From Mobula hypostoma (taxonomy: Eukaryota): a stretch of 64,000 nt of DNA. Below the pieces are notes generated by a model. The model searched no databases and had not been told where the DNA came from. It worked only from the letters and a program-made list of their open reading frames with translations. Within the stretch, counting starts at the first letter, position 1; every line of letters begins with the position of its first letter. Made by a program: the position numbers and the translations under genes. The stretch spans positions 9,672,001-9,736,000 of the forward strand of contig NC_086110.1 of assembly GCF_963921235.1 (NCBI RefSeq), written 5' to 3'. Shown here in pieces: positions 2,375 to 49,370 of this stretch.

Positions 2375-4980
2375 TGCTCAAGCAGGACAGATTAGAGGGC
2401 TTGTCTACTGAGTCCCTGTGGGTGGAGCTGAGAAACAGGAAAGGTATGGCCACATTAGTGGGATTGTATTACAGACCACCCAATAGTCAAAGAAAATTGG
2501 AAGTGCAAATCTGCAGAGAGATAGCAGGCAACTGCAGGAAACATAAAGTTGTGGTGGTAGGGGATTTTAATTTTCCATATATTGATTGGGTCTCCCATAC
2601 TGTTAGGGGTCTAGATGGTTTAGAGTTTGTAAAATGTGTTCAAGAAAGTTTTCTAAATCAATATATAGAGGGACCAACTAGAGGGGATACAATATTGGAT
2701 CTCCTGTTAGGAAACGAGTAGGTTCTGTGCAGGGGAGCACTTTGGTTCCAGTGATCATAACACCATTAGTTTCAACTTGATCATGGACAAGGATAGATCT
2801 GGTCCTAGGGTTGAGGTTCTTAACTGGAAGAAGGCCAAATTTGAAGAAATGAGAAAGGATCTAAAAAGCGTGGATTGGGACAGGTTGTTCTCTGGCAAGG
2901 ATGTGATTGGTAGGTGGGAAGCCTTCAAAGCAGAAATTTTGAGAGTGCAGAATTTGTATGTTCCTGTCAGGATTAAAGGCAAAGTGAATAGGAATAAGAA
3001 ACCTTGGTTCTCAAGGGATATTGCAACTCTGATAAAGAAGAAGAGGGAGTTGTATGACGTGTGTAAGAAGTGCAAGAAAATACTTAAGAAAGAAATCAGG
3101 AGGGCTAAAAGAAGATATGAGGTTGCCTTGGCAGTCAAAGTGAAGGATATTCCAAAGAGCTTTTACAGGTATATTAAGAGCAAAAGGATTGTCAGGGATA
3201 AAATTGGCCCTCTTGAAGATCAGAGTGGTCGGCTATGTGCAGAACCAAAGGAAATGGGGGAGATTTTAAATAGGTTTTTTTGTGTCTGTGTTTACTAAGG
3301 AAATTGGCATGAAGTCTATGGAATTGAGGGAAACAAGTAGTGAGATCACGGAAACTGTACAGATCGAAAAGGAGGAGGTCCTTGCTGTCTTGAGGAAAAT
3401 TAAAGTGGATAAATCCCCGGGACCTGACAGGGTGTTCCCTCGGACCTTGAAGGAGACTAGTGTTGAAATTGCAGGGGCCCTGGCAGAAATATTTAAAATG
3501 TCGCTGTCTACAGGTGAGGTGCCGGAGGATTGGAGAGTGGCTCATGTTGTTCCGTTGTTTAAAAAAAGAATCGAAAAGTAATCCAGGAAATTATAGGCCA
3601 GTAAGTTTAACGTCGGTAGTAGGTAAGTTATTGGAGGGAGTACTAAGAGACAGAATCTACAAGCATTTGTATAGACTGGGACTTATTAGGGAGAGTCAAC
3701 ATGGCTTTGTGCGTGGTAGGTCATGTTTGACCAATCTATTGGAGTTTTTCGAGGAGGTTACCAGGAAAGTGGATGAAGGGAAGGCAGTGGATATTGTCTA
3801 CATGGACTTCAGTAAGGCCTTTGACAAGGTCCCGCATGGGAGGTTAGTTAGGAAAATTCTGTCGCTAGGTATACATGGAGAGGTGGTAAATTGGATTAGA
3901 CATTGGCTCGATGGAAGAAGCCAGAGAGTGGTGGTAGAGAATTGCTTCTCCGAGTGGAGACCTGTAACTAGTGGTGTGCCACAGGGATCAGTGCTGGGTC
4001 TATTGTTATTTGTCATCTATATCAATGATCTGGATGATAATGTGGTAAATTGGATCAGCAAGTCTGCTGATGATACAAAGATTGGAGGTGTAGTAGACAG
4101 TGAGGAAGGTTTTCAGAGCCTGCAGAGGGACTTGGACCAGCTGGAAAAATGGGCTAAAAAATGGCAGATGGAGTTTAATACTGACAAGTGTGAGGTATTG
4201 CACGTTGGAAGGACAAACCAAGGTAGAACATATAGGGTTAATGGTATGGCACTGAGGAGTGCAGTGGAACAGAGGGATCTGGGAGTACAGATACAAAATT
4301 CCCTAAAAGTGGCGTCACAGGTAGATAGGGTGGTAAAGAGAGCTTTTGGTACATTGGCCTTTATTAATCAAAGTATTGAGTATAAGAGCTGGAATGTTAT
4401 GATGAGGTTGCATAAGGCATTGGTGAGGCCGAATCTGGAGTATTGTGTTCAGTTTTGGTCACCAAATTACAGTAAGGATATAAATAAGGTTGAAAGAGTG
4501 CAGAGAAGGTTTACATGGAGGTTGCCGGGACTTGAGAAACTCAGTTACAGAGAAAGGTTGAATAGGTTGGGACTTTATTCCCTGGAGCTTAGAAGAATGA
4601 GGGGAGACTTGATAGAGGTATATAAAATTATGATGGGTATAGATAGAGTGAATGCAAGCAGGGTTTTTCCACTGAGGCAAGGGGAGAAAAAAACCAGAGG
4701 ACATGGGTTTAGGGTGAGGGGAGAAAAGTTTCAAGGGAATATTAGGAGGGGGCTTCTTCACACAGAGAGTGGTGGGAGTATGGAATGAGCTGCCAGACGA
4801 GGTGGTAAATGCGGGTTCTTTTTTAACATTTAAGAATAAATTGGACAGATACATGGATGGGAGGTGTATGGAGGGCTATGGTCCGTGTGCAGGTCAGTGA
4901 GACTAGGCAGAAAATGGTTCGGCACAGCCAAGAAGGGCCAAAAGGCCTGTTTCTGTGCTGTAGTTTCTATGGTTTCTATG
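2375..4980 (+). mobile_element. Young 5'-truncated CR1 LINE (EN C-terminus, RT, 3' UTR)
   Basis: ORFs 2374..2721 and 3460..4788, a (tttctatgg)n tail and TSD GAAAG at 2370-2374 and 4981-4985. Confidence 0.96.
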
Positions 4981-4985
4981 GAAAG

Positions 4986-5967: not shown

Positions 5968-6180
5968 GTTTAAATGTTTGCTTGGTGGTCGCATTGCTTC
6001 AACATTCGCAGTTATATGCATATTTATACAAAGATTATTCTACACCTCTACTTTAGTTAAATCTGTATAACATTTGATAAGTAGCCAAATAACAATTGTA
6101 GAAAACGGAAGCTGTGATAATTCATTACGCCGCAATGGATTTCAGCAGACATAAGAATACTCCAGGACGAAAAGGCACGA
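5968..6180 (+). pseudogene. Inverted, truncated homologue of the ITIM-like cytoplasmic exon plus its upstream intron
   Basis: The + strand matches the reverse complement of ~44775-45010. Acceptor ag at 6100-6101 is followed by KTEAVIIHYAAMDFSRHKNTPGRK, versus KTGAAAAYYAAVDFKRFKHTPERK in copy 2. Confidence 0.8.
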
Positions 6181-6206
6181 CGTCAAGCGCGTATGGCGCT
6201 TTTTAC
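6142..6206 (-). CDS. Candidate terminal exon of copy 1, a diverged duplicate of cytoplasmic exon 1
   Basis: Intact acceptor ttcgttccag at 6207-6216 within a ~310-bp paralogous block. Phase 0 reads VKSAIRA* and phase 1 reads RKKRHTRLTSCLFVLEYSYVC*. Confidence 0.45.
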
Positions 6207-6833
6207 CTGGAACGAAATATAATGACATGAAAGTGCAGCACCATCAACGGAATTGTTAACGCAATGCTTACAAAAATGTTTACACCAGCACACATATTGC
6301 AGCAGCTGCAGAATCTTTTGTTCTGAAAGAATTAATAGTCTGGTTTAAGCGCAATGCGATATGGTGCGCGATAGTTATCTGGTTCCGTCCCAATTCCAGC
6401 GATCTCGGTTCGATTATAATCTCAAGAGTTTCCACATCATCCGAGTAATCATATGTGTTTCTTTAAGGTCCCCAGCGTCCTCCCGCATATCAGTACTGGT
6501 CTTAAATGAATGTTTTAAAACTGCATAACCGTTTGAAAAACTAAAATGATTCTCCTGAGTACGAAATAATGATTACAGCAGTTATCAGAATATATTTTCA
6601 AGACAAGAGATAATTTAGCTCACGTCATTCAAGTGCATATTAAGAAATGTATAAATAAAAATTTAGTGCCAAATACATTTCCTAACACGATTTGAATTGT
6701 TGATTGTGACGGGCTCAATGCGTAAACTATAAAGCCATAAACGGTTCTAATATGACTATCCTTAATTCTGACAAGATAATGTCATCTTTTGAATGGCCAC
6801 AATATATGGCAGTAAATGAATGCATGAACAAAC

Positions 6834-6871
6834 CTCACGTTGATTCGCTTCCGTAAGGCATTCTTCTTTAC
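6834..6871 (-). CDS. IgSF V-C1 receptor copy 1, cytoplasmic exon 1 (GKEECLTEANQRE)
   Basis: Acceptor ttcgttccag and donor GAG|gtttgt are conserved with 45360-45397. An alternative donor CAAC|gtgagg lies 5 nt upstream in the exon. Confidence 0.72.
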
Positions 6872-8017
6872 CTGGAACGAAATATGAAATGAAACTGCAG
6901 CACCATGGGCGGGATTGATAAAGAAATGATTGTAAAAATATTTATAGTAACACACAAATTGCAGCATTTGCAGATTATCTTGTGCTAAAGACACTTATAT
7001 AATGGGTTAAGCCCAACATGTCACATTGGCGCAATAGTAATTCCCATTGCTACACACTACCTGCGATCTCGGTGCGATTGTGATTTCAAATGTTTCCAAA
7101 TCCTACAAGTAATCGCATGTGTTTCGCTCAGGTGCCCCAAAGTCCTCCCACATCCATATTCATACAAGTTAAGTTAAATTACAACTCTAGCTTTCGTGAA
7201 AGTCTATTAGTATCATGGGCTTTCCTTATTACTGGGGAATAAATTAGATAGAAAAAACGGGTCAGGGCAGGCACAAAACACAATAGGCTGAATGTTCTCT
7301 ATCTATATCACTAGTTACAAATTTCGCTGAAAATTCCAAGCAGTTTGGCTTTCACCAATCGCACTTTCTTGTTCCAGAAATGAAAGTAATCGTTTCGGAT
7401 ACCAACGGAATATATGGCTAGAGAATGGGAATAGATAATTAACTTCTACGTCATAGTCTTGCATACACGCCTGAGAATCTTCCTTCCGTTTATATTCCCA
7501 AGTTTATAAACATACCCGGCATTTGCTTTCACGGTCAATCTGTTTGGAAGGGATGACATTTTCCCCATTTGGTTGAGCATTTTGTAATTTATCAAATAAA
7601 TTAATGTAGATTGCGAACACTCTGCCGCTGGTTTGGGCAAAAGGCTACTGACTGAGGGAGTAAATGGGTTTTACTGTCGTTGGTATGTTCCTTCCATCAG
7701 TTTTCGTCGTTTCCACGCGCTGCCATATATAGGTGTGAGGTGCTCACACCGAATTTCCAGATGAACCTTCAACATTTTGGTATGGGTTCGGATCAATCAG
7801 AGTACACAGTCAATGTCCTTTTTTTCTCAGTTTCTGGCAGAGAATAGAATGCCTAGTTTCTGTTAAATACTGTATTTGAAATATGTTGGCTAGACATTGA
7901 AACCCCAGTTTCAATTATACAAAAAAACCAGTGACGATTGTGCGGTCCCGAAAGAAGGCACTGAAATATTTTCTTTTGTCCTGTTTGTGGATTTGGAAAA
8001 TGTTCTTTAAATCTTAC

Positions 8018-8131
8018 CTTTACTTTCCTGCTTTCGGCACTGGGTCCCAATGGCGATCATTAGCACTAGGATCGCCAGTCCACCCATTACAAAACGAGGA
8101 ACCCAGGAAGAAAGAGGTTTGCCAGAGGAAC
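8018..8131 (-). CDS. IgSF V-C1 receptor copy 1, transmembrane exon (GSSGKPLSSWVPRFVMGGLAILVLMIAIGTQCRKQESK)
   Basis: 114-nt phase 1-1 exon (atcctccag|GT...G|gtaag) with a hydrophobic stretch followed by a basic stop-transfer. The paralogue at 46527-46640 has the same length. Confidence 0.88.
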
Positions 8132-8621
8132 CTGGAGGATATAAGTATATACGTTATGCAAAGCTGCGAAGTAAATACATAACTCTGTTTTTGGGAGGAG
8201 GTGAGGGTGGCTGCTGGTGTTTGTGCTGATGGTGGCGTTGGAATGCGTAAATAAGCGAATAAGTTCGCAGTACAGAACGGATTAAAAATACGAGAAAAGA
8301 AAATAAAACGAAAAGCGTTGTTCTTATATTAGACAGAGGAATTGATCTCGGCCTCCATGTAACTCATGGCTGCTCGATTGTACATTATAGGTTTATGGGT
8401 GGATAGGAAATAACTTCCAAAGTCTAAGAAAAATTTTACCAGTCGAAGATTGAAAATTTATTAACTTATAGCTTGCTGTGTCATAAACCTCGCTTCACTG
8501 CAACGCCAACATGTCAGAGATCACAATCTTTCCATTCATTTTCAAAGGGTAGCAATTTAGAAATATATATTGTAAACTTCCCTAAGTGATAGTCGTAGTG
8601 AACTCCGCACCGGTAGGAGTT

Positions 8622-8677: not shown

Positions 8678-9076
8678 GGTGGTGTGGAAAGAAGGTCAGA
8701 GTTGAGAGATTTAACGTGGTCATGATGGAAAACTGATGGAAGCTCCGGGTAAAACGAAGACAGTACAAATGAAAGGACGGTTTCACTGGTAAAGAATGAA
8801 ATTCTGGTTTACAAATGTTACGCAGGAGAAACATCAATGCACATGGGAGGAAATGCAAATTGTTAAAATAAATAAACTTGTTTCCCAATGTTGTAAAACA
8901 TACAAAGAGTATACGTAAACTACAGTCACAGGACGTATCTTCTGTTGCTGTCTGTTGTGCAACACATGAAATTCCATATTTAATAAAAGCCCTTCCATCT
9001 TACGCTGTGAAATTTCTCGTGACCACGAGCAAATAGTGATCGTGTATTGATAAATTAACAAGAAATGGCTTCGTAC

Positions 9077-9379
9077 CTTGGTTAGATTTGGAAATAGAAT
9101 AGACTGCTACCGCTGAAATATTGAGGGAGACATGAGACACCAAACAGGTATAATTTGTGTCATTCTGGACCGGCTGTGTCTCCTTCAAGTTGCTCGAAAC
9201 CACATAAAGTCCCTCGGTATTCTTCCTTAACTTGGTCTGTATGCCTAATGCTATTTTAATGCCATTTTTATACCAAGTAAGCGAGAAATTCTTGGGATAA
9301 AAGGCAGATGTTTCACACACGATAATGAAAGTTGTAGCTGAATTCCTATTCGCGGAAATCATCAGTGGAGTTGGAACTG
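9077..9379 (-). CDS. IgSF V-C1 receptor copy 1, C1-set exon
   Basis: 303-nt phase 1-1 exon (ttcgcag|CA...G|gtacga) with C1 motifs VCETSAFYPKNFSLTWYKNG, GLYVVSSNL and YTCLVSH. Contained in ORF 9000..9476. Confidence 0.93.
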
Positions 9380-10139
9380 CTGCGAAACAGATAGTGGAAA
9401 ACATGTTAAATGACGTTCCGATATTGAAATGCTTTCCGTTAATTAAGTTCAAGTCCATTAAGTCTGAAGGTTGCATTTGAAAAATCTATATCAGGTTACT
9501 AATGCTAGATTCATGTTCATACTACCCGACGGCATTTGCTGTTTCTTACTAACTCAACTATAGTGACACCACTTCACACAAATACCATTTGCATTTTTCC
9601 AAAGAATTATCCATATAAACCCGAGAGTTTGTAACTGGACGAAACTCTGAATTTGTTTCACAAAGATAGTGAACTGAACTGCAATTCAATAATGTAAATA
9701 TGAGTAAGTAATCTGTTTAATAAGAAAATACCCCGTAACGTTACAGAATATATCGTCTTCGAATACGCCAGCAAGCAGGACCATACCATTTTCAAACTAT
9801 GTAATTTATTGAAAGAATGTTCGATTTAATTCTGAGTTTTCCACGTTCCAGTTCACAATGCCGAGCAGTTGACAAGCATTGGGTTACAGGCCGCCTTTCA
9901 AATCCGTTACACTAATTCTATACTTTACTTCGACTGTCAAGTAGTAAATTAATCAGTCATTATTCTAGCATTATTCGATTACAGTGTAGGCGCGTTGGAA
10001 ATTAGGCTTTTATCTAGCGAAATACCATGATGCATATTGGGATGTATACATAAAATAAGAAGGTGCTAAGAAGTGTTGTTCAACAGACAAATCTTTGTAT
10101 TAAAGTTCCTGTAAAAGGGAAAACACAGGATGGCGCAGT

Positions 10140-10610
10140 ATGTTTACTTTCATATAAAAGATGGAATATTGTATGAAATATTATATCAGACCGGTTAAAC
10201 AACATTCAGATTATTCGTAACAGTTTGGTGTCACACCAGTGGTGTGCACAATGTAAGAACGATGTATTATGCCAGAAGGAGTGGGGAAGACTCGCAGTTT
10301 TTTTCTTTAATGGGAAGGAATATTGTTATGAAGTCAGATGATATCTTCATGAATTCCTCAGAACGAAGGAGCCTGAGGCCAATCTAATACTATAAAATAT
10401 AAAATAAGATGAAACATAGAGAGGTAGGATAACTACACCGTTGATTCAGTAGTAGGCATATCAGAAGCAATTAGGTTATTTCTGGAAGGAAGAAGAGAAT
10501 TTTGAAAGGAATTTGGAAGAGATTTGAGAAGAACTCAAGATCAAAGGGGATGGTGAAATCAGATACAGTTACAAGATTAGGGGCGCATTTGGACAGGCTG
10601 TAATGTTAAG
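10140..10610 (+). mobile_element. Old degenerate CR1 3' fragment in the V-C1 intron
   Basis: Weak resemblance to CR1 3' ends and to 52880-53200 in the paralogous intron. Confidence 0.45.
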
Positions 10611-11165
10611 TTGCATGAAAGAAGAACGATTATCGTGTAACTACTTTATCCAAGAAATTATACCCATTGCGCTTTACATTAATGTTATCAAAAAACACAC
10701 ACACACAAAAGGTGGAGGGAGAAATAAAGTGCCACAGGGTACTTGGATGATAGGTTATGCAAATTTTGAAATCTGTGATATTGTTAATCACCAACTTCAA
10801 AAAAATGGAGGTGCTGACAAATTTTCGTAAGGATCTGCAGAGTTTTCATGCTTGATTACCCTTCGATCCTGCCACAACCGTTCACAATTTAAGCTAATGT
10901 AATCCAACGATTCTCCAAATAGCATGGATTAGAATCATAACGTGATATCTTTGGTTACTAGTGGCATATTTTGTGGATATGGTGATTCATTGCAAACCGT
11001 CGGTCCCTCGCGGATTCGCAGAGAGTGGATAGAGCGATTGATGTTAGTCTTACAACATAACACGGACGATGAATATTAAAGGTCATCTTCATAAGCGTCT
11101 GTTTCTTGGTGTTTTATATTCTTTATAGTTAATGGATAATTTATTCGCCTATTAATTTAACTTAC

Positions 11166-11486
11166 CATTCACTTTTAGAAGTGAACCAGTTCTATTTCTT
11201 GCAGACAGTCCTTTGCGGGTCACTGAACAGAAATACAGTCCAGAATCTTGGATCATTACTTGTTGCAACTCAAAGTACCAAGTTCTTGTACCTCTCAGAC
11301 CAGAACTTTTTCTGTTGCCGGTGCCTGTCCGTTGGTAATTATTCTCGCCCTGTTTCCACCAATGCACTTTCGTCCAGGATTGATCCTGAGAAATGGGAAA
11401 TAAGCAGTAGAACGTGACGTTCCCTCCTTTGGATACAACCGCTTCTTTGGGCAATTGAGTTACACTGAACGTACTCTGATCCGCAG
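11166..11486 (-). CDS. IgSF V-C1 receptor copy 1, V-set exon with joined J-like end
   Basis: 321-nt phase 1-1 exon (ttgacag|CT...G|gtaag). It encodes B-strand Cys (TFYC), C-strand Trp (VHWWK), DSGLYFC and a G-strand NRTGSLLKV. Contained in ORF 11152..11493. Confidence 0.93.
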
Positions 11487-11645
11487 CTGTCAAGGAAAAG
11501 TTAGGTTGGTTAAATCATCAATGAAATGAATTTTTAATAAATGTGACCGACTGTACACCTTAATCACAGTTAGACTCAATAGCATGGAAGCTAACCAGAG
11601 ATTGATTTATAAATTATGGAACGTAGAAAATGAATAAAGCTGTAC

Positions 11646-11694
11646 CTATGTAAATGTTCCCACTGACTGCCAGGAGGAGCAACATACTTGACAT
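11646..11694 (-). CDS. IgSF V-C1 receptor copy 1, exon 1 (signal peptide MSSMLLLLAVSGNIYI)
   Basis: ATG at 11694-11692, hydrophobic 16 codons, phase-1 donor G|gtacag. A paralogous exon lies at 54525-54576. Confidence 0.85.
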
Positions 11695-23001: not shown

Positions 23002-24839
23002 TGTCATGGTCCGGTTCATGAATTCGGCGTTCCGGTTCACAGTCCGATCCGTGTACTCCAGACTCTAGGTCTTCCAGCTGTCCCTTCTTTTATTTGGGCT
23101 TAATCATTCGCACCTGATGCTCGTCTTGGGGCTGGGAATATAAGTGGTCCTGGGTTCGAGTGTGGTTGCTGGTTCGTCTTGTCAGTATCCCGTCCTCGCC
23201 TCCGTGGGGTAAGTCAGGCCATCTTTGCCGTTACCCTACGGTTGGATCTGTCCCTTCCTTTCCCCTTCCATCTGTAGCCTTGTCTGCAACCTGTGTCTGG
23301 AGCCTTGCCTGTAACCTGTGTCTAAAGCCTTGCCTGCAACCTGTGTCTGGAGCCTTGCCCGCAACCATGTCAAGTTCAAACACCAGAGCGAGACCGGAGT
23401 CTCGCTGTGTCAAGATAAGGAACTGTCTATCTTTGAGTTGGAACTGTCTCTGTGTGAACGCCTTCGCTAGGTAGGTCCGGCCATCTGCCGCTACCGAATG
23501 TTGGGAACCGTCTCTGTGTCCACTGCTGCTCTAGGTTGGTCCGGCCGTTTGCCGCTACCTAGTGTAGAGAACTGTCTCATCGTGTTCAGCATTCTGTGTA
23601 TGAGTCCCGGCCCTACGTCCTGTTCCCAAGGAGGGGTCCCGGCTCTGTGTTCCATGTTTCTTTCTCTCAAGTCCAAGGCTCCGCGTTCCCATGCTCTAGA
23701 CCAAGGCTCCGAGCGTCCAGTCCTCGTCCAAGGCTCCAAGGTTCCTGTCTCCCAAGACCACGTCATGTCTTCGCCTACTTCCGGAGTTCGAGCCGGAGTC
23801 AAGACCCAGGTTTTGGGTCCGTGTCCATTCTCTGGCTCAAAGTCCGAACCCAAGCTTCGTCATGTCCTCGCCTCGAAGAACCCAAGCCTCATCATGTTCT
23901 CGCCTCGAGGAACCAAAGCCATGAAGAACCCAAGCCACGAAGAACCCAAGCCACGAAGAACCCAAGTCTCGAGGAACCCAAGCCACGAAGAACCAAAGCC
24001 TCGAGGAACCCAAACCATGTCCAGTCCTGTAGCCACGTCATGTCCTCATAGTTCCGGGGTCCGCACCCAAGCCTCATCATGTCCTCGCCCCGAAGAACCC
24101 AAGTCTCGAGGAACCCAAGCCACGAAGAACCAAAGCCTCGAGGAACCCAAACCATGTCCAGTCCTGTAGCCACGTCATGTCCTCCTAGTTCCGGGGTCCG
24201 CACCCAAGCCTCATCATGTCCTCGCCCCGAAGAACCCAAGTCTCGAGGAACCCAAGCCACGAAGAACCAAAGCCTCGAGGAACCCAAACCATGTCCAGTC
24301 CTGTAGCCACGTCATGTCCTCATAGTTCCGGGGTCCGAGCCCCAATCAAGATCCAGGTTCTGGGTCCTTGTCCAGTCTCCGTCTCGGAGTCCGAACCCAA
24401 GCCTCGTCATGTCCTCGCCCCGAAGAACCCAAGTCTTGTCATGTTCTTGCCTCGAGGAACCCAAGCCACGAAGAACCCAAGTCTCGAGGAACCGAAGCCA
24501 CGAAGAACCAAAGCCTCGAGGAACTCAAACCATGTCCAGTCCTATAGCCACGTCATGTCCTCCTAATTCCGGGGTCGAGCCCCAGTCAAGACCCAGGTTC
24601 TGGGTACTTGTCCAGTCTCTGGCTCGGAGTTCAAGCCCAGGCTCCTAGTTCTCAGTTCCTAGTCCTGGTCCCGCAAGCCTATCCAATGCCCTAGCCCAAT
24701 TTTGTGTTCTTATCCCACTTCCTAGTCTGCATCCAGTCACGTCCCTAACTCTAGTCTCTAGCCCTATCCTGTTCCTAGTACTTCAGTGTCTGTGTCTTGC
24801 ATTTTGGTGCACTCCCAGCAACCCCACCCCCCCATGACA
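23002..24839 (+). mobile_element. Solo LTR with internal minisatellite expansions
   Basis: TGTCATGG...CCATGACA ends and a 5-bp TSD ATCTA/ATCTG (one mismatch). Related to 29169-30388. Confidence 0.82.
23870..24570. repeat. Higher-order tandem repeat (~137-bp units built from GAAGAACCCAAGCC-like subunits) inside the LTR
   Basis: Visible repeated blocks, reflected in the repeated peptides of ORFs 24079..24306 and 24216..24566. Confidence 0.85.
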
Positions 24840-29168: not shown

Positions 29169-30388
29169 TGTCATGGTCCGGTCCGTGAAGTCCGCATTCT
29201 GCTTCATGGTCCGATCCATCGTTCCTCATTCCAGGTTTACCAGTTCTTCCCGGTTTCCGTTGAGGCACCTGATTCTCGTTTGGGCTGCCTTCATAAATAG
29301 ATTCAGGATTCAGCCTCTGGCTGCTGGACTGTTCCTTTCACCTTCCACTTCATCTTCCTACTATAGCTTGCTTGAGTCCTCCACCTGAGGCCTCTGCCTG
29401 CAACCTCCGCCTGAAGTCTCAGCCTGCAACCTCGACCTGGAGCCTTGCCTGCAACTTCGGCATGAACCTGTATCGTTCTACAGCCGGAGCAAGACCGGAG
29501 TCATGCTGTGTCTAGGTAAGGAACTGTCTATCGTTCTTTGGAACTGTCTCTGTGTCCACGCCTTCGCTAGGCAAGTCCAGCCGTTTGCCGCTACCTTGTG
29601 TTGGGAACCGTCTCTGTGTCCACGCCTTCGCTATGTAGGTCCAGCCGTTTGCTGCTACCTTGTGCTTCTCTCTACGTCCTGTTCCCAAGAAGAGGTCCCG
29701 GCTCTATGTTTCATGTTCCTGTCTCCCAAGACCAAGTCTCTGTGTTCTGCGTTCCTGTCTCCCAAGACCAAGACTCTGTGTTCTGCGTTCTTGTCTCCCA
29801 AGGCTTCGGGGTCTCGTCCTGTCCTTGTGCCTCGCCCAGTGCAGGAGTACCTCGTCTAGTCCAAGCCACGTCCAAGTACCTCGTCTAGTCCAAGCCACGT
29901 CCAACTACCTTGTCTAGTCCAAGCCACGTCCAAGTACCTCGTCTAGTCCAAGCCACGTCCAATTACCTCGTCTGGACCAAGCCACGTCCAATTACCTCGT
30001 CTAGTCCAAGCCACGTCCAAGTACCTCGTCTAGACCAAGCCACGTCCAATTACCTCGTCTAGTCCAACCCAAGTCTTTGGGTTCTCGTCCTGTGCAGGAG
30101 TTCCACGTCCAGTCCTGTAACCTAGCCACGTCCAGATCTGTAGCAATGTTTTGTCCTTGCCAGGATCTGGAGTCCGAGCCCGAGTTAAGACCCAGGTTCT
30201 GGGTCCTTGTCCAGTCTCTGGTTTGGAGTCCAAGCCCAGGCTCCTATTTCCTAGTTCCTCGTCCAGGTCCCGTTGTTCTAGACCAAGTCTGTGTCCTGGC
30301 ATGTCCCTAACTCTAGTCATAGTCCTGTTCCTAGTACTTCAGTCTCGCTTTTGGGTCCGCTTCCAGCGCGCCCCCCCCCCCCATGACA
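29169..30388 (+). mobile_element. Solo LTR, same family as 23002-24839
   Basis: TGTCATGG...CCATGACA ends and a perfect TSD AGTTT (29164-29168 and 30389-30393). Confidence 0.88.
29846..30066. repeat. 29-bp minisatellite, ~8 copies (AGTACCTCGTCTAGTCCAAGCCACGTCCA)
   Basis: Units recur every 29 nt from 29851 to 30054 with no spacers. Confidence 0.93.
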
Positions 30389-44100: not shown

Positions 44101-44754
44101 CCCCACGAATTGGCCAGGTGAAACTGAAAACCACAGTTCAAATATATGAAGTCAGTAATTCAGAACAGAGAAGAATATTGCTTTCATCAAATGTGCAATA
44201 AATCCATGGTATTCACCATGCCTCGCGCAGTCATTGAGTATAGGAACTGCAGAAGACGACACAATTTTACATACAGAGCGATAAAGTAATGTGTGTCTAT
44301 AGTAACATTTGCCTTTGTAGTGAAATAAGACTTCACTAACTGGCGGAGTATATACAAGAAAAAATATCGATTCCGATTTATGTTACTTATAGTTCCGCGT
44401 TGTTCTAAGGCCTTACCAAGGACGCGCCCTTTCCATCTATAATGGCGTGGCAAATTTCATCTTATTTTTGATGTACAACCACAGTTTCTCCCATATGTTT
44501 GTGTCTCTGCAGCTCGGCATATTCTGTGTTACTTATGCAAATCCTCCTGTTGTTTTTTCCAGTCAATGCCAAGGTCGCATACGACAACTCGTCACTTGAA
44601 TGTTCTTGGACTGCCTGTAAGCAATATTTTTTTTTAAAAAAACGTTAATTAATTGCGCTTCAGTCTTTGTACGTTGCTGTTCATGTCGCATGTCAACCAC
44701 TTCTTCAGTTGTTTCAATCCCTATCTTTTTCGTTGGCTTATTACACAGCCTTAC

Positions 44755-44856
44755 CTGAACAAACGCGATTTTTTCACGATGGCTTTTTCGTTCTGGAGTG
44801 TGCTTGAATCTCTTGAAGTCTACAGCGGCGTAATATGCAGCCGCGGCTCCCGTTTT
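44755..44856 (-). CDS. IgSF V-C1 receptor copy 2, ITIM-like cytoplasmic exon (KTGAAAAYYAAVDFKRFKHTPERKSHREKIAFVQ)
   Basis: Phase-0 acceptor ccatgcag|AAA matches the upstream phase-0 donor, and there is a strong donor CAG|gtaagg. The frame also stays open to 44563, so this could be a terminal exon. Confidence 0.72.
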
Positions 44857-45359: not shown

Positions 45360-45397
45360 CTCAGGATGATCCGCTTCTGTAAGACATGCTTCATTAA
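45360..45397 (-). CDS. IgSF V-C1 receptor copy 2, cytoplasmic exon 1 (VNEACLTEADHPE)
   Basis: 38-nt phase 1-0 exon with splice sites conserved with 6834-6871. Confidence 0.75.
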
Positions 45398-46526: not shown

Positions 46527-46640
46527 CCTTCCTTTCCTGCTTTCGGCACTGCGTCCGAATGACGAACATTAGCAGTAAGATCACAAATCCAGCCAATGTA
46601 CCACCGGAAACCCAAATGGAAAGAGATTTGCCAGAGGAAC
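46527..46640 (-). CDS. IgSF V-C1 receptor copy 2, transmembrane exon (GSSGKSLSIWVSGGTLAGFVILLLMFVIRTQCRKQERK)
   Basis: 114-nt phase 1-1 exon (cttccag|GT...G|gtaag) with an uncharged hydrophobic core. Confidence 0.88.
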
Positions 46641-49067: not shown

Positions 49068-49370
49068 CTTGGTTAGATTTGGAAATAGAATAGACTGCCA
49101 CCGCTGAAGTATTGAGCGAGACATGAGATACCATGCAGGTATAATTCCTGCCGATCTTATCTGGCTGCATCTCTGTCAAGTTGCTCGAAACCTCATAAAG
49201 ACCTTCGGTGTTCTTCTTTATATTAGTCTGCGTGCCCAAAACTATTTCAACACCATTTTTATACCAGGTAAGCGAGAAGTCCTTGGGATAAAATGCAGCT
49301 GTTTCACACACAATAATCAAGGCGGTAGTTGAATGCTTTTTCGCGAAAATCTTCAATGGAGTTGGTACTG
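49068..49370 (-). CDS. IgSF V-C1 receptor copy 2, C1-set exon
   Basis: 303-nt phase 1-1 exon (ttccacag|CA...G|gtacga) encoding AVPTPLKI...VCETAAFYPKDFSLTWYKNG...YTCMVSH. Confidence 0.93.

What the first reader, a model, noticed from the sequence alone, without database searches (positions are those of the whole stretch)
9077..11486. Germline-joined VJ plus C1 domain: a non-rearranging, antigen-receptor-like architecture
Seen in sequence: one exon encodes a full V-set domain including a J-like G strand (NGTGSLLKV / NRTGSLLKV), with no flanking recombination signal. A C1-set exon, TM and tail follow. Established knowledge: C1-set domains are confined to a few jawed-vertebrate immune families (Ig, TCR, MHC, beta2m, tapasin, SIRP, B7-H6-like), and a VJ-C1-TM gene is the hypothesised pre-RAG precursor of antigen receptors. 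Inference: the family may inform antigen-receptor origins or be a shark-lineage SIRP/NKp30 relative.
Basis: partly seen in the sequence, partly recalled or inferred. Interest (0 to 1): 0.7.

Follow-up and report, generated by a model that had tools for sequence, protein, structure and literature searches.

The report
Ray non-rearranging V-C1 receptor gene pair
The stretch holds the two outer-domain exons of a real devil-ray gene for a surface immune receptor shaped like one antibody or T-cell-receptor chain but needing no DNA rearrangement. It is one of two copies in the window, from a large shark, ray and chimaera family that this scan has met many times, so it is useful but not a surprise.

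Summary
On the minus strand, 11486-11166 is a single-exon V-set domain ending in a J-like G strand (NRTGSLLKV). 9379-9077 is a C1-set exon. Leader, TM and tail exons complete an intact 282-aa ORF with canonical splice sites. A second intact copy of 360 aa (NGTGSLLKV) lies at 54576-44462. There is no RSS, and a spliced V-to-C1 junction is present in a probable RNA run.

This is not an orphan precursor. It is a pair from a multigene family found in rays, sharks and chimaera. RefSeq already models relatives under inconsistent automatic names (SIRP-alpha-like, tapasin-related-like, Ig lambda-like, NCR3LG1-like). Earlier notes of this scan flag many members in this genome.

Copy B has an ITIM plus a TEYAEL motif, a tail laid out like SIRP-alpha. 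Copy A has a 29-residue tail and an Arg at the outer end of the TM. Together they look like an inhibitory and possibly activating pair.

The domains do not fall inside SIRP, NKp30 or B7-H6:
- The C1 domain is about equally distant from Ig light-chain C, MHC-I alpha3 and SIRP C1.
- The V family profile scores higher against an NKp30 homologue than against SIRP V.

The PRARP relationship and synteny could not be tested. Verdict: a new member of a known kind, of moderate interest.

The parts
11646..11694 (-). Copy A leader exon (MSSMLLLLAVSGNIYI, phase 1 donor)
   Evidence: It starts at ATG, has a GT donor and joins the V exon in frame.
11166..11486 (-). Copy A VJ exon: whole V-set domain with the J-like G strand N-R-T-G-S-L-L-K-V
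   Evidence: Pfam V-set 28.9 bits. AG/GT flanks. No RSS. The exon end at 11166 is joined to 9379 in a transcript contig.
9077..9379 (-). Copy A C1-set exon
   Evidence: Pfam C1-set 43.8 bits against C2-set_2 21.1. Best hits among solved structures are UrIg2, Ig C and SIRP d3. AG/GT flanks.
8018..8131 (-). Copy A stalk and TM exon (WVPRFVMGGLAILVLMIAIG), with Arg at the outer end of the TM
6834..6871 (-). Copy A cytoplasmic exon 1 (GKEECLTEANQRE)
   Evidence: It matches the tails of Hypanus P0003 and P0005.
6183..6206 (-). Copy A terminal exon (VKSAIRA, then stop), giving a 29-residue tail without tyrosine
   Evidence: The Hypanus orthologue P0003 ends with the corresponding VKSAIRV.
6102..6176 (+). 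Inverted remnant of the family's second tail exon (HYAAMDFSRHKNTPGRKG), on the opposite strand to copy A
   Evidence: tblastn with the P0002 tail, E 3.7e-6.
54525..54576 (-). Copy B leader exon
54067..54387 (-). Copy B VJ exon (N-G-T-G-S-L-L-K-V)
   Evidence: Pfam V-set 35.2 bits. 78% aa identity to copy A. AG/GT flanks.
49068..49370 (-). Copy B C1-set exon
   Evidence: Pfam C1-set 44.0 bits. AG/GT flanks. A probable RNA run, X1, holds 0.28 of the words of this exon plus its flanks.
46527..46640 (-). Copy B stalk and TM exon, with an uncharged TM core
45360..45397 (-). Copy B cytoplasmic exon 1
44755..44856 (-). Copy B cytoplasmic exon 2 (AYYAAVDF...KHTPERK)
44462..44614 (-). Copy B last exon, with the ITIM LSYATL and the ITSM-like TEYAEL, then stop

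Best explanation
The finding is the ectodomain of copy A, one of two tandem, same-strand paralogues in the window. Copy A spans 11694-6183 and copy B spans 54576-44462. Both belong to a multigene family of non-rearranging type I membrane receptors found in rays, sharks and chimaera. The layout is leader, a single-exon VJ-type V domain, one C1-set domain, a stalk and TM, and a tail.

The germline-encoded V domain most likely binds a still unknown ligand, either a cell-surface or a pathogen molecule.

Copy B (360 aa) probably signals negatively. Its tail tyrosines (LSYATL, TEYAEL and a degenerate AYYAAV) would be phosphorylated and recruit SH2 phosphatases, as in SIRP-alpha.

Copy A (282 aa) has lost the tyrosine tail and carries an Arg at the outer end of its TM. 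It is either an activating counterpart that borrows an acidic-TM adaptor, or a signalling-poor decoy.

Shown here: exon structure, intact ORFs, domain classes, absence of RSS, the V-to-C1 splice in this subfamily, family breadth, and orthologues of both copies in a stingray. Inferred: ligand binding, phosphatase recruitment and adaptor pairing.
For: - Both gene models are intact with AG/GT at every junction.
- Pfam assigns V-set and C1-set.
- An AlphaFold model of the V-C1 ectodomain of the stingray orthologue P0005 has mean pLDDT 87.9. It shows two beta-sandwich domains, and the second has a D strand.
- A spliced V-C1 contig is present in a probable RNA run, and X1 holds part of the copy-B C1 exon.
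- The C1 search found 514 proteins at E<=1e-3. The close hits with one C1 stretch are all chondrichthyan wherever names were checked.
- About 100 representatives have V and C1 both similar to the window's.
- P0003 groups with copy A and P0005 groups with copy B, so the duplication predates the Mobula-Hypanus split.
- Between the copies, dN/dS is 0.42 for V and 0.26 for C1, which indicates purifying selection.
- Tail motifs and their spacing align with a lungfish SIRP tail. Pairwise E is 1e-7 for chimaera, 7e-7 for Heptranchias and 8e-4 for copy B.
- An Arg sits at the corresponding TM position in the short-tailed forms checked (copy A, P0003, P0005), and a Gly sits there in the ITIM-bearing ones (copy B, P0002).
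Against: - There is no direct proof that copy A itself is transcribed. The contig's C1 part matches a paralogue and its 5' end is not in the window.
- The runs are only guessed to be RNA and are kept as contigs.
- No ligand, adaptor or phosphatase data exist.
- Copy B has lost two of the family's tyrosines (IAFVQ, VVVHQK), and its first motif has Ala at position -2.
- Copy A replaces the first Gly of the G-x-G bulge with Arg, which could weaken the G strand.
- An Arg at the membrane edge need not bind an adaptor.
Confidence: 0.8

Rival explanations
1. The genes are true cartilaginous-fish orthologues or co-orthologues of SIRP-alpha/beta. They would have lost one C1 domain and would bind the ray CD47.
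For: - RefSeq names many relatives SIRP-alpha-like or SIRP-beta-like.
- The layout of a VJ-type V, a C1 and a four-tyrosine tail matches, and the tail aligns with a lungfish SIRP tail.
- The inhibitory/short-tail pairing resembles SIRP-alpha and SIRP-beta.
- Foldseek lists SIRP-alpha and SIRP-beta at E about 2e-12.
- Skate P0007 has V-C1-C1.
Against: - In the C1 tree the family (98/91) is separated from all 12 SIRP C1 domains and sits weakly with Ig light-chain C.
- The family C1 profile scores SIRP C1 no better than Ig L or MHC-I alpha3.
- The V profile scores SIRP V at 50-56, lower than an NKp30 homologue at 75.
- Window V against SIRP V gives only 3-10 bits by phmmer.
- The YYCVKF motif shared by the two lungfish SIRP V domains (VKF in the frog) is absent from the window's V domains.
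- The two C1 domains of P0007 are near-identical, so they look like a recent duplication.
Confidence: 0.15
2. The family is the C1-retaining sister lineage of NKp30 (NCR3). The V domain would be of NKp30 type, and mammalian NKp30 would be a C1-less derivative. The ligands would be B7-H6-like.
For: - The family V profile scores highest against P0225 (hhalign 75.3, E 1.4e-13). The best solved-structure hits of P0225 are NKp30.
- The G strand carries N-G-T, as in the G-N-G-T of NKp30, in 34 of 45 members.
- RefSeq names V-only products NCR3-like. One is a chimaera isoform that skips the C1 exon (P0177).
- Copy A has an Arg at the edge of the TM.
- An earlier, unchecked note puts an NKp30-like gene 16 kb beyond the window.
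Against: - Only one NKp30 homologue was available as comparator.
- The window's V domains give 16-19 bits to it by phmmer, but 31-34 bits to shark VNAR and TCR beta V domains.
- Human NKp30 is not among the 60 best solved-structure hits of either window V.
- The V tree is unresolved.
Confidence: 0.2
3. It is a relic of the pre-RAG antigen-receptor chain and works like Ig or TCR, pairing through V and C1 into a dimer that recognises antigen.
For: - It has a VJ exon followed by a C1 exon, and no RSS.
- The best solved-structure hits of the V domains are VNAR and TCR beta.
- Ig light chains give the best Foldseek E-values in the PDB.
- The C1 domain sits weakly with Ig L constant domains.
Against: - The family is a large germline array with ITIM or short tails.
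- The stalk of both window copies has no Cys for an interchain bond.
- The J-motif Phe/Trp is replaced by an N-glycosylation sequon in 34 of 45 members.
- The model is extended, like B7-H6 (TM 0.80), not bent like a Fab light chain (TM about 0.43).
- UrIg and UrIg2 are linked to the MHC and the Ig/TCR complex and are the published candidates (PMC12227049). No such linkage is shown here.
Confidence: 0.05
4. One or both copies are unexpressed or decaying duplicates in a transposon-rich stretch.
For: - LINE fragments fill the introns and flanks.
- The tail of copy A was rearranged, with an inverted exon remnant.
- Copy A has G99R in the J-like motif.
- The only spliced contig does not match copy A cleanly.
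Against: - Both ORFs are complete with canonical splice sites.
- dN/dS is below 1.
- The short tail ending of copy A is conserved in the stingray orthologue P0003.
- The contig's V part is 322/324 identical to copy A and keeps N-R-T.
Confidence: 0.08

Closest known systems
SIRP-alpha / SIRP-beta (signal-regulatory proteins)
   Same: - Non-rearranging VJ-type V domain followed by C1-set domain(s), a TM, and either an ITIM/ITSM-type multi-tyrosine tail or a short tail with a basic TM residue.
- Paired inhibitory and possibly activating genes in tandem.
- The tail motif order aligns with a lungfish SIRP tail.
   Different: - One C1 domain instead of two.
- The C1 domains do not group with SIRP C1.
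- The V profile is less similar to SIRP V than to an NKp30 homologue.
- The YYCVKF motif shared by the two lungfish SIRP V domains is absent.
- Strong homologues are found only in cartilaginous fish.
- The ligand is unknown.
NKp30 (NCR3) and its expanded relatives in cold-blooded vertebrates
   Same: - VJ-type V domain with an N-G-T sequon in the G strand.
- Arg at the outer edge of the TM in copy A.
- The family V profile's best comparator is an NKp30 homologue.
- V-only products and isoforms of relatives are named NCR3-like.
   Different: NKp30 has no C domain. Here the C1 exon is present and spliced in. Copy B carries an inhibitory tail. Pairwise similarity of the window's V domains to NKp30 is weak.
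UrIg / UrIg2 (elasmobranch non-rearranging antibody-like genes; PMC12227049, PDB 9dmx)
   Same: Both have a germline VJ exon followed by C1-set domains in cartilaginous fish. UrIg2 is the best whole-chain solved-structure hit of the copy-A C1 domain (3.3e-14).
   Different: - The UrIg2 construct solved is V-C1-C2-C3 and forms a disulfide-linked dimer with an Fc-like C2-C3 (PMC12227049).
- Here there is one C1 domain, a TM and a signalling tail.
- The best single UrIg2 domain scores only 26.6 bits, like Ig lambda C (24.4).
B7-H6 (NCR3LG1) and the B7/butyrophilin V-C ectodomains
   Same: Best Foldseek match among reviewed proteins (E 7.6e-14, TM 0.80), with the same extended two-domain shape. 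RefSeq names some relatives NCR3LG1-like, PD-L1-like or CD276 homologue.
   Different: Only 19-20% identity. From my own knowledge, B7-type V domains lack the J-like G-x-G-(S/T)-x-L-x-V strand that this family has. No sequence-level grouping was seen.
PRARP (non-rearranging VJ IgSF genes of chicken and other bony vertebrates; Fu et al. 2019, cited in PMC10751288)
   Same: [quoted passage not shown]
   Different: Could not be compared. No bony-vertebrate protein with one C1 stretch appeared among the 150 best C1 hits whose names were checked.
Ig light chains / TCR chains
   Same: V(J)-C1 order. The V domains' best solved-structure hits are VNAR and TCR beta. Ig light chains give the best Foldseek E-values.
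   Different: No RSS and no separate J segment. The protein is membrane-bound with ITIM or short tails. The stalk has no Cys. A sequon replaces the J-motif Phe/Trp. The model has a different elbow (TM about 0.43).

Membership tests
Unnamed chondrichthyan VJ-C1 paired-receptor family (RefSeq: SIRP-alpha-like, tapasin-related-like, Ig lambda-like, NCR3LG1-like) | Leader, single VJ exon, single C1 exon and TM exon, joined by phase-1 introns | tested here: met
   for both copies. The junction is seen in a contig.
Unnamed chondrichthyan VJ-C1 paired-receptor family (RefSeq: SIRP-alpha-like, tapasin-related-like, Ig lambda-like, NCR3LG1-like) | Family motifs: WWK-x-GE, (N)-G-T-G-S-x-L-x-V, PTPL at the start of C1, GLY, Y-x-C-x-V-x-H | tested here: met
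   Alignments A2 and A3. Copy A departs only at G99R.
Unnamed chondrichthyan VJ-C1 paired-receptor family (RefSeq: SIRP-alpha-like, tapasin-related-like, Ig lambda-like, NCR3LG1-like) | Groups inside the family clade with orthologues in another ray | tested here: met
   In the C1 tree the family has support 98/91. Copy A groups with P0002 and P0003, and copy B with P0005. The V tree agrees for the three-row clade at 100/100.
SIRP | Two membrane-proximal C1-set domains | tested here: not met
   Each copy has one C1 exon.
SIRP | C1 and V domains group with SIRP domains | tested here: not met
   Trees. hhalign V scores 50-56 against SIRP and 75 against NKp30. Reference sampling was small.
SIRP | Multi-tyrosine ITIM tail (alpha) or short tail with a basic TM residue (beta) | tested here: met
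   Copy B has LSYATL and TEYAEL. Copy A has a 29-residue tail and Arg.
SIRP | Synteny with the SIRP locus; CD47 binding | not testable with these tools
   The window holds only these genes and LINE remnants. No neighbours were returned.
NKp30 (NCR3) | Ectodomain is a single VJ-type V domain with no C domain | tested here: not met
   The C1 exon is present and spliced to V.
NKp30 (NCR3) | V domain closest to NKp30 V | tested here: inconclusive
   The profile comparison favours the NKp30 homologue. Pairwise scores are weak, and NKp30 is absent from the top solved-structure hits.
B7-H6 / B7 family | B7-type V domain and sequence grouping with B7 members | tested here: inconclusive
   Top Foldseek hit but at 19% identity, with E-values within about two orders of TCR, Ig, SIRP, CADM and BTN. 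No B7 sequences were available for a tree.
UrIg / UrIg2 | VJ followed by several C domains ending in an Fc-like pair | tested here: not met
   One C1 domain, then a TM. Architecture of UrIg2 taken from PMC12227049 and PDB 9dmx.
Rearranging antigen receptors (Ig/TCR) | V and J as separate segments flanked by RSS | tested here: not met
   One continuous VJ exon, with no heptamer or nonamer.
PRARP | Sequence grouping with chicken PRARP genes | not testable with these tools
   The paper is not held and no PRARP sequence was obtainable.
C1-set Ig domain | The C1-set profile beats the C2 and I-set profiles; a D strand is present | tested here: met
   C1-set 43.8 and 44.0 bits against C2-set_2 21.1 and 24.2. 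In the model, the strand at 154-160 lies between C/C' and E.

The most novel reading that the evidence does not exclude
The family could be a distinct, ancient membrane-bound VJ-C1 lineage that is sister to NKp30. It would keep the C1 domain that NKp30 lost, and that C1 would be closest to Ig light-chain constant domains. Sharks and rays would then preserve an 'NKp30 with a constant domain': a living model of a non-rearranging antigen-receptor-like chain wired to ITIM or adaptor signalling, and a bridge between the NK-receptor and Ig/TCR domain families.
Probability: 0.18. Interest if true: 0.65.

Novelty: new member of a known kind. Interest (0 to 1): 0.35.

Why it matters
Non-rearranging genes with a joined VJ exon and a C1 domain are the material used to reason about how Ig and TCR arose. 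They also show how paired inhibitory and activating receptors evolve.

This pair adds a cleanly resolved example. It has full exon maps, an inhibitory copy beside a short-tailed Arg copy, and orthologues of both in a stingray.

The public names given to relatives (SIRP-like, tapasin-related-like, Ig lambda-like, NCR3LG1-like) do not reflect a tested orthology. The practical value is for annotation and for choosing genes for ligand and signalling studies in cartilaginous fish. It does not change the current picture of antigen-receptor origins, where UrIg and UrIg2 are better placed.

Tried and rejected
1. Profile searches of the family V and C1 alignments against solved structures were uninformative. 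Whole-chain scores are summed over many Ig domains, so titin, Robo and antibody heavy chains fill the list. I used per-domain HMM scores, hhalign and trees instead.

2. The V-domain tree is unresolved. Long outgroup branches attach inside the family, so I draw no sister-group conclusion from it.

3. The look-up of encoding contigs for the stingray orthologue returned no DNA and no neighbours. Synteny stayed untested. Earlier notes list MHC genes only on other pieces of this genome, which neither shows nor excludes linkage.

4. The papers on PRARP, on UrIg (2023) and on B7-H6/NKp30 (2012) are not held. No paper on this V-C1-TM family was found.

5. The word-indexed homologue search did not reach tetrapod SIRPs from the family profile. 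SIRP references were obtained through lungfish and frog hits.

6. Reads: only contigs of runs guessed to be RNA were available. Expression level, strand and copy specificity could not be judged.

7. The contig's 27-nt 5' extension was not found in the window.

8. I ran no complex prediction, because the report makes no claim that these proteins bind each other.
Full report
**What is there**

The region is read on the minus strand. Translation shows a V-type domain exon and a C-type domain exon at exactly the coordinates given. tblastn with these exons finds a second, co-oriented copy 43 kb away.

I built both gene models and checked every junction.

| Exon | Copy A (282 aa) | Copy B (360 aa) |
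|---|---|---|
| Leader | 11694-11646 | 54576-54525 |
| VJ | 11486-11166 | 54387-54067 |
| C1 | 9379-9077 | 49370-49068 |
| Stalk/TM | 8131-8018 | 46640-46527 |
| Tail exon 1 | 6871-6834 | 45397-45360 |
| Tail exon 2 | none | 44856-44755 |
| Last exon | 6206-6183 (7 codons) | 44614-44462 |

All introns have GT..AG. The introns after the leader, V, C1 and TM exons are phase 1, as usual for Ig-superfamily genes. Self-comparison of the window shows the copies are colinear at 75-82% nucleotide identity over exons and neighbouring intron. The rest of the window is LINE debris: reverse transcriptase, L1 ORF1-like and endonuclease fragments.

**Domain identity**

- Pfam gives V-set for both first domains (28.9 and 35.2 bits).
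- Pfam gives C1-set for both second domains (43.8 and 44.0 bits against a cut-off of 21). The CD80-like C2-set scores only 21-24, and there is no I-set hit for the second domain.
- The V exon runs without a break from the A strand through Cys28, Trp43 and D-x-G-x-Y-x-C to a G strand. That strand is N-G-T-G-S-L-L-K-V in copy B and N-R-T-G-S-L-L-K-V in copy A.
- Aligned with 23 relatives, the strand is G-x-G-(S/T)-x-L-x-V, the J-segment motif of Ig and TCR.
- No RSS heptamer or nonamer lies in or beside either V exon.
- An AlphaFold model of the V-C1 ectodomain of the stingray orthologue of copy B has mean pLDDT 87.9. It shows two beta-sandwich domains, the second with a D strand, as expected of C1.

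**Two details that temper the 'J-like' reading**

- The Phe/Trp that precedes G-x-G in true J segments is Asn here. It forms an N-x-(S/T) glycosylation sequon in 34 of 45 family members.
- In copy A the first Gly of the bulge is Arg.

**Transcription**

A 660-nt contig from a run of the same species, guessed to be RNA, joins 11166 directly to 9379. It skips 1786 nt with GT..AG on the minus strand. The VJ-to-C1 splice is therefore real.

The contig's V part differs from copy A at 2 of 324 positions and keeps N-R-T. Its C1 part carries 13 differences, and these reproduce residues of another Mobula paralogue, P0002. Its 27-nt 5' extension is not in the window. It is thus an allele that has undergone conversion, a very close paralogue, or an assembly chimera. 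It proves the splice for this subfamily, not for copy A as assembled.

The same run holds 0.28 of the words of the copy-B C1 exon plus flanks, of which the exon makes up 47%. DNA runs hold 0.98.

**The family**

An exhaustive HMMER search with the copy-A C1 exon found 514 proteins at E<=1e-3.

- The close hits with one C1 stretch are 200-400 residues long and 37-85% identical.
- Wherever I looked up names, they come from rays (Mobula hypostoma, M. birostris, Hypanus, Hemitrygon, Amblyraja, Leucoraja), sharks (Mustelus, Scyliorhinus, Heterodontus, Heptranchias, Chiloscyllium, Hemiscyllium, Rhincodon) and the chimaera Callorhinchus.
- About 100 representatives have both a V and a C1 domain similar to the window's.
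- The automatic names are inconsistent: SIRP-alpha-like, SIRP-beta-1-like, tapasin-related-like, Ig lambda-1-like, NCR3LG1-like, NCR3-like, CD276 homologue, PD-L1-like and class II beta-like.
- The genome is that of the lesser devil ray.
- Hypanus P0003 is the orthologue of copy A, with 83-85% identity and the corresponding VKSAIR tail ending. P0005 is the orthologue of copy B's ectodomain, at 94% and 84%. The duplication is therefore older than the split of these rays.
- dN/dS between the copies is 0.42 for V and 0.26 for C1.
- Earlier notes of this scan describe many further members on this chromosome and elsewhere. They reach the same general reading.

**How it most likely works**

Copy B's tail reads AYYAAVDF...KHTPERK...IAFVQ...LSYATL...TEYAEL.

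- Chimaera and cow-shark relatives have the fuller set: V-x-Y-A/V-x-L-N/D-L, T-V-Y-A-Q, L-T-Y-A-x-L and T-E/D-Y-A-E-L.
- Their order and spacing align along the whole tail with a lungfish SIRP tail (ITYATL, TEYAEV, VTYADV, TEYATV). Pairwise E is 1e-7 to 7e-7, and 8e-4 for copy B.
- By analogy with the established ITIM/ITSM mechanism, copy B should recruit SH2 phosphatases and inhibit.

Copy A ends 29 residues after the membrane, has no tyrosine and has Arg in W-V-P-R-F-V-M-G-G.

- An Arg sits at the corresponding position in the short-tailed stingray forms.
- The ITIM-bearing copy B and P0002 have Gly there.
- The homologue of the second tail exon lies inverted on the plus strand at 6102-6176.
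- The 7-codon last exon follows an acceptor that duplicates the one before tail exon 1.
- That copy A signals through an acidic adaptor is inference only.

**Comparison with known families: sequence-profile scores**

C1 domain:

| Comparator | Family HMM, per-domain bits | hhalign score |
|---|---|---|
| Lungfish SIRP C1 | 35-54 | 79.5 |
| Rabbit SIRP | 12-36 (four domains) | 47 (third C domain) |
| Ig light-chain C | 36-55 | 77.6 |
| MHC-I alpha3 | 35-53 | 83 |

The C1 domain is a generic, genuine C1. In a maximum-likelihood tree the family is one clade (98/91). All 12 SIRP C1 domains lie across a weak split, and the family sits weakly (82/69) with Ig light-chain C.

V domain:

| Comparator | hhalign with family V profile | phmmer with the window's own V |
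|---|---|---|
| NKp30 homologue P0225 | 75.3 | 16-19 bits |
| Frog SIRP V | 56.4 | 5-10 bits |
| Lungfish SIRP V | 50.6 | 3-10 bits |
| Shark Ig kappa-like V | 43.9 | 13-15 bits |
| Shark VNAR (solved structures) | not tested | up to 31-34 bits |
| TCR beta V (solved structures) | not tested | up to 34 bits (copy B) |

The best solved-structure hits of P0225 are NKp30.

**Comparison with known families: structure search and verdict**

- Among reviewed proteins, B7-H6 comes first (E 7.6e-14, TM 0.80). TCR beta, PD-L1, Ig kappa, CADM, SIRP-alpha/beta, TAPBPL and butyrophilins follow within two orders of magnitude, all near 20% identity.
- In the PDB, Ig light chains have the best E-values but TM near 0.43, because the model is extended rather than bent.
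- UrIg2 is the best whole-chain solved-structure hit of the C1 domain. However, its best single domain scores 26.6 bits, like Ig lambda C.

The receptor is therefore a mosaic by resemblance: an NKp30- or antigen-receptor-like VJ domain, a generic C1 domain and a SIRP-alpha-like tail. It is not a tested member of SIRP, NKp30, B7-H6 or UrIg.

PRARP, another published non-rearranging VJ family, could not be compared.

**Novelty and score**

- The idea that non-rearranging VJ-C1 receptors echo the antigen-receptor precursor is established. I recall it being argued for SIRPs; PMC10751288 cites NKp30, PRARP and UrIg in that role. UrIg and UrIg2, with their linkage to the MHC and to the Ig/TCR complex, are the current candidates (PMC12227049).
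- This family appears unstudied in the papers I could search. It is nevertheless modelled in RefSeq for many species, and this scan has found it repeatedly.
- The finding is real and cleanly resolved, but it is a new member of a known kind. Interest is 0.35.
- The most novel reading still open is that the family is the C1-retaining sister of NKp30. I put that at about 0.18.

Noticed in passing
window 6102-6176 (+) and 6183-6206 (-): A remnant of the family's second tail exon lies inverted next to copy A's 7-codon terminal exon. That exon's acceptor region duplicates the one before tail exon 1 (6199-6488 against 6863-7153, 74% identity). The short ending is conserved in the Hypanus orthologue.
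   Followed up: partly
window 9075-9379 and 11166-11489, contig of run X1: The spliced contig is a mosaic. Its V part is nearly identical to copy A, while the middle of its C1 part carries the residues of paralogue P0002. Gene conversion between paralogues or a contig-assembly chimera could explain this.
   Followed up: partly
window 3064-4984 (+) against 56781-58695 (-): Two inverted copies of a LINE reverse-transcriptase element at 94.5% identity flank the locus. Further L1 ORF1-like and endonuclease-like ORFs lie at 14.6-19.9 kb.
   Followed up: partly
window 23271-24532 and 29378-30075: G+C-rich tandem arrays, with units of 16/32/137 bp and of 26/29/36/64 bp, lie in the 43-kb spacer between the two genes. 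The two blocks share an 84% identical stretch (23380-23564 against 29480-29664).
   Followed up: no
window about 8400-8450 (-), intron between the C1 and TM exons of copy A: A dinucleotide (AC/GT) microsatellite reads as a run of His-Thr in translation.
   Followed up: no
P0177 (Callorhinchus milii): This isoform of a family gene skips the C1 exon. The result is a V-TM-ITIM product that RefSeq names NCR3-like, which shows how a V-only, NKp30-like form can arise from this gene layout.
   Followed up: partly
P0007 (Amblyraja radiata): This skate member has V-C1-C1, with two near-identical C1 domains. That looks like a recent exon duplication rather than the SIRP d2/d3 arrangement.
   Followed up: partly
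P0001 (Carcharodon carcharias, 1105 aa, named titin-like): This white-shark model has about ten C1-set repeats that score 43-46 bits each with the family C1 profile. It may be merged tandem genes or a multi-C1 protein.
   Followed up: no
window 46527-46640 against 8018-8131: dN/dS between the two TM exons is 0.86, far higher than for V (0.42) or C1 (0.26). This fits a switch between a TM with Arg and one without.
   Followed up: partly
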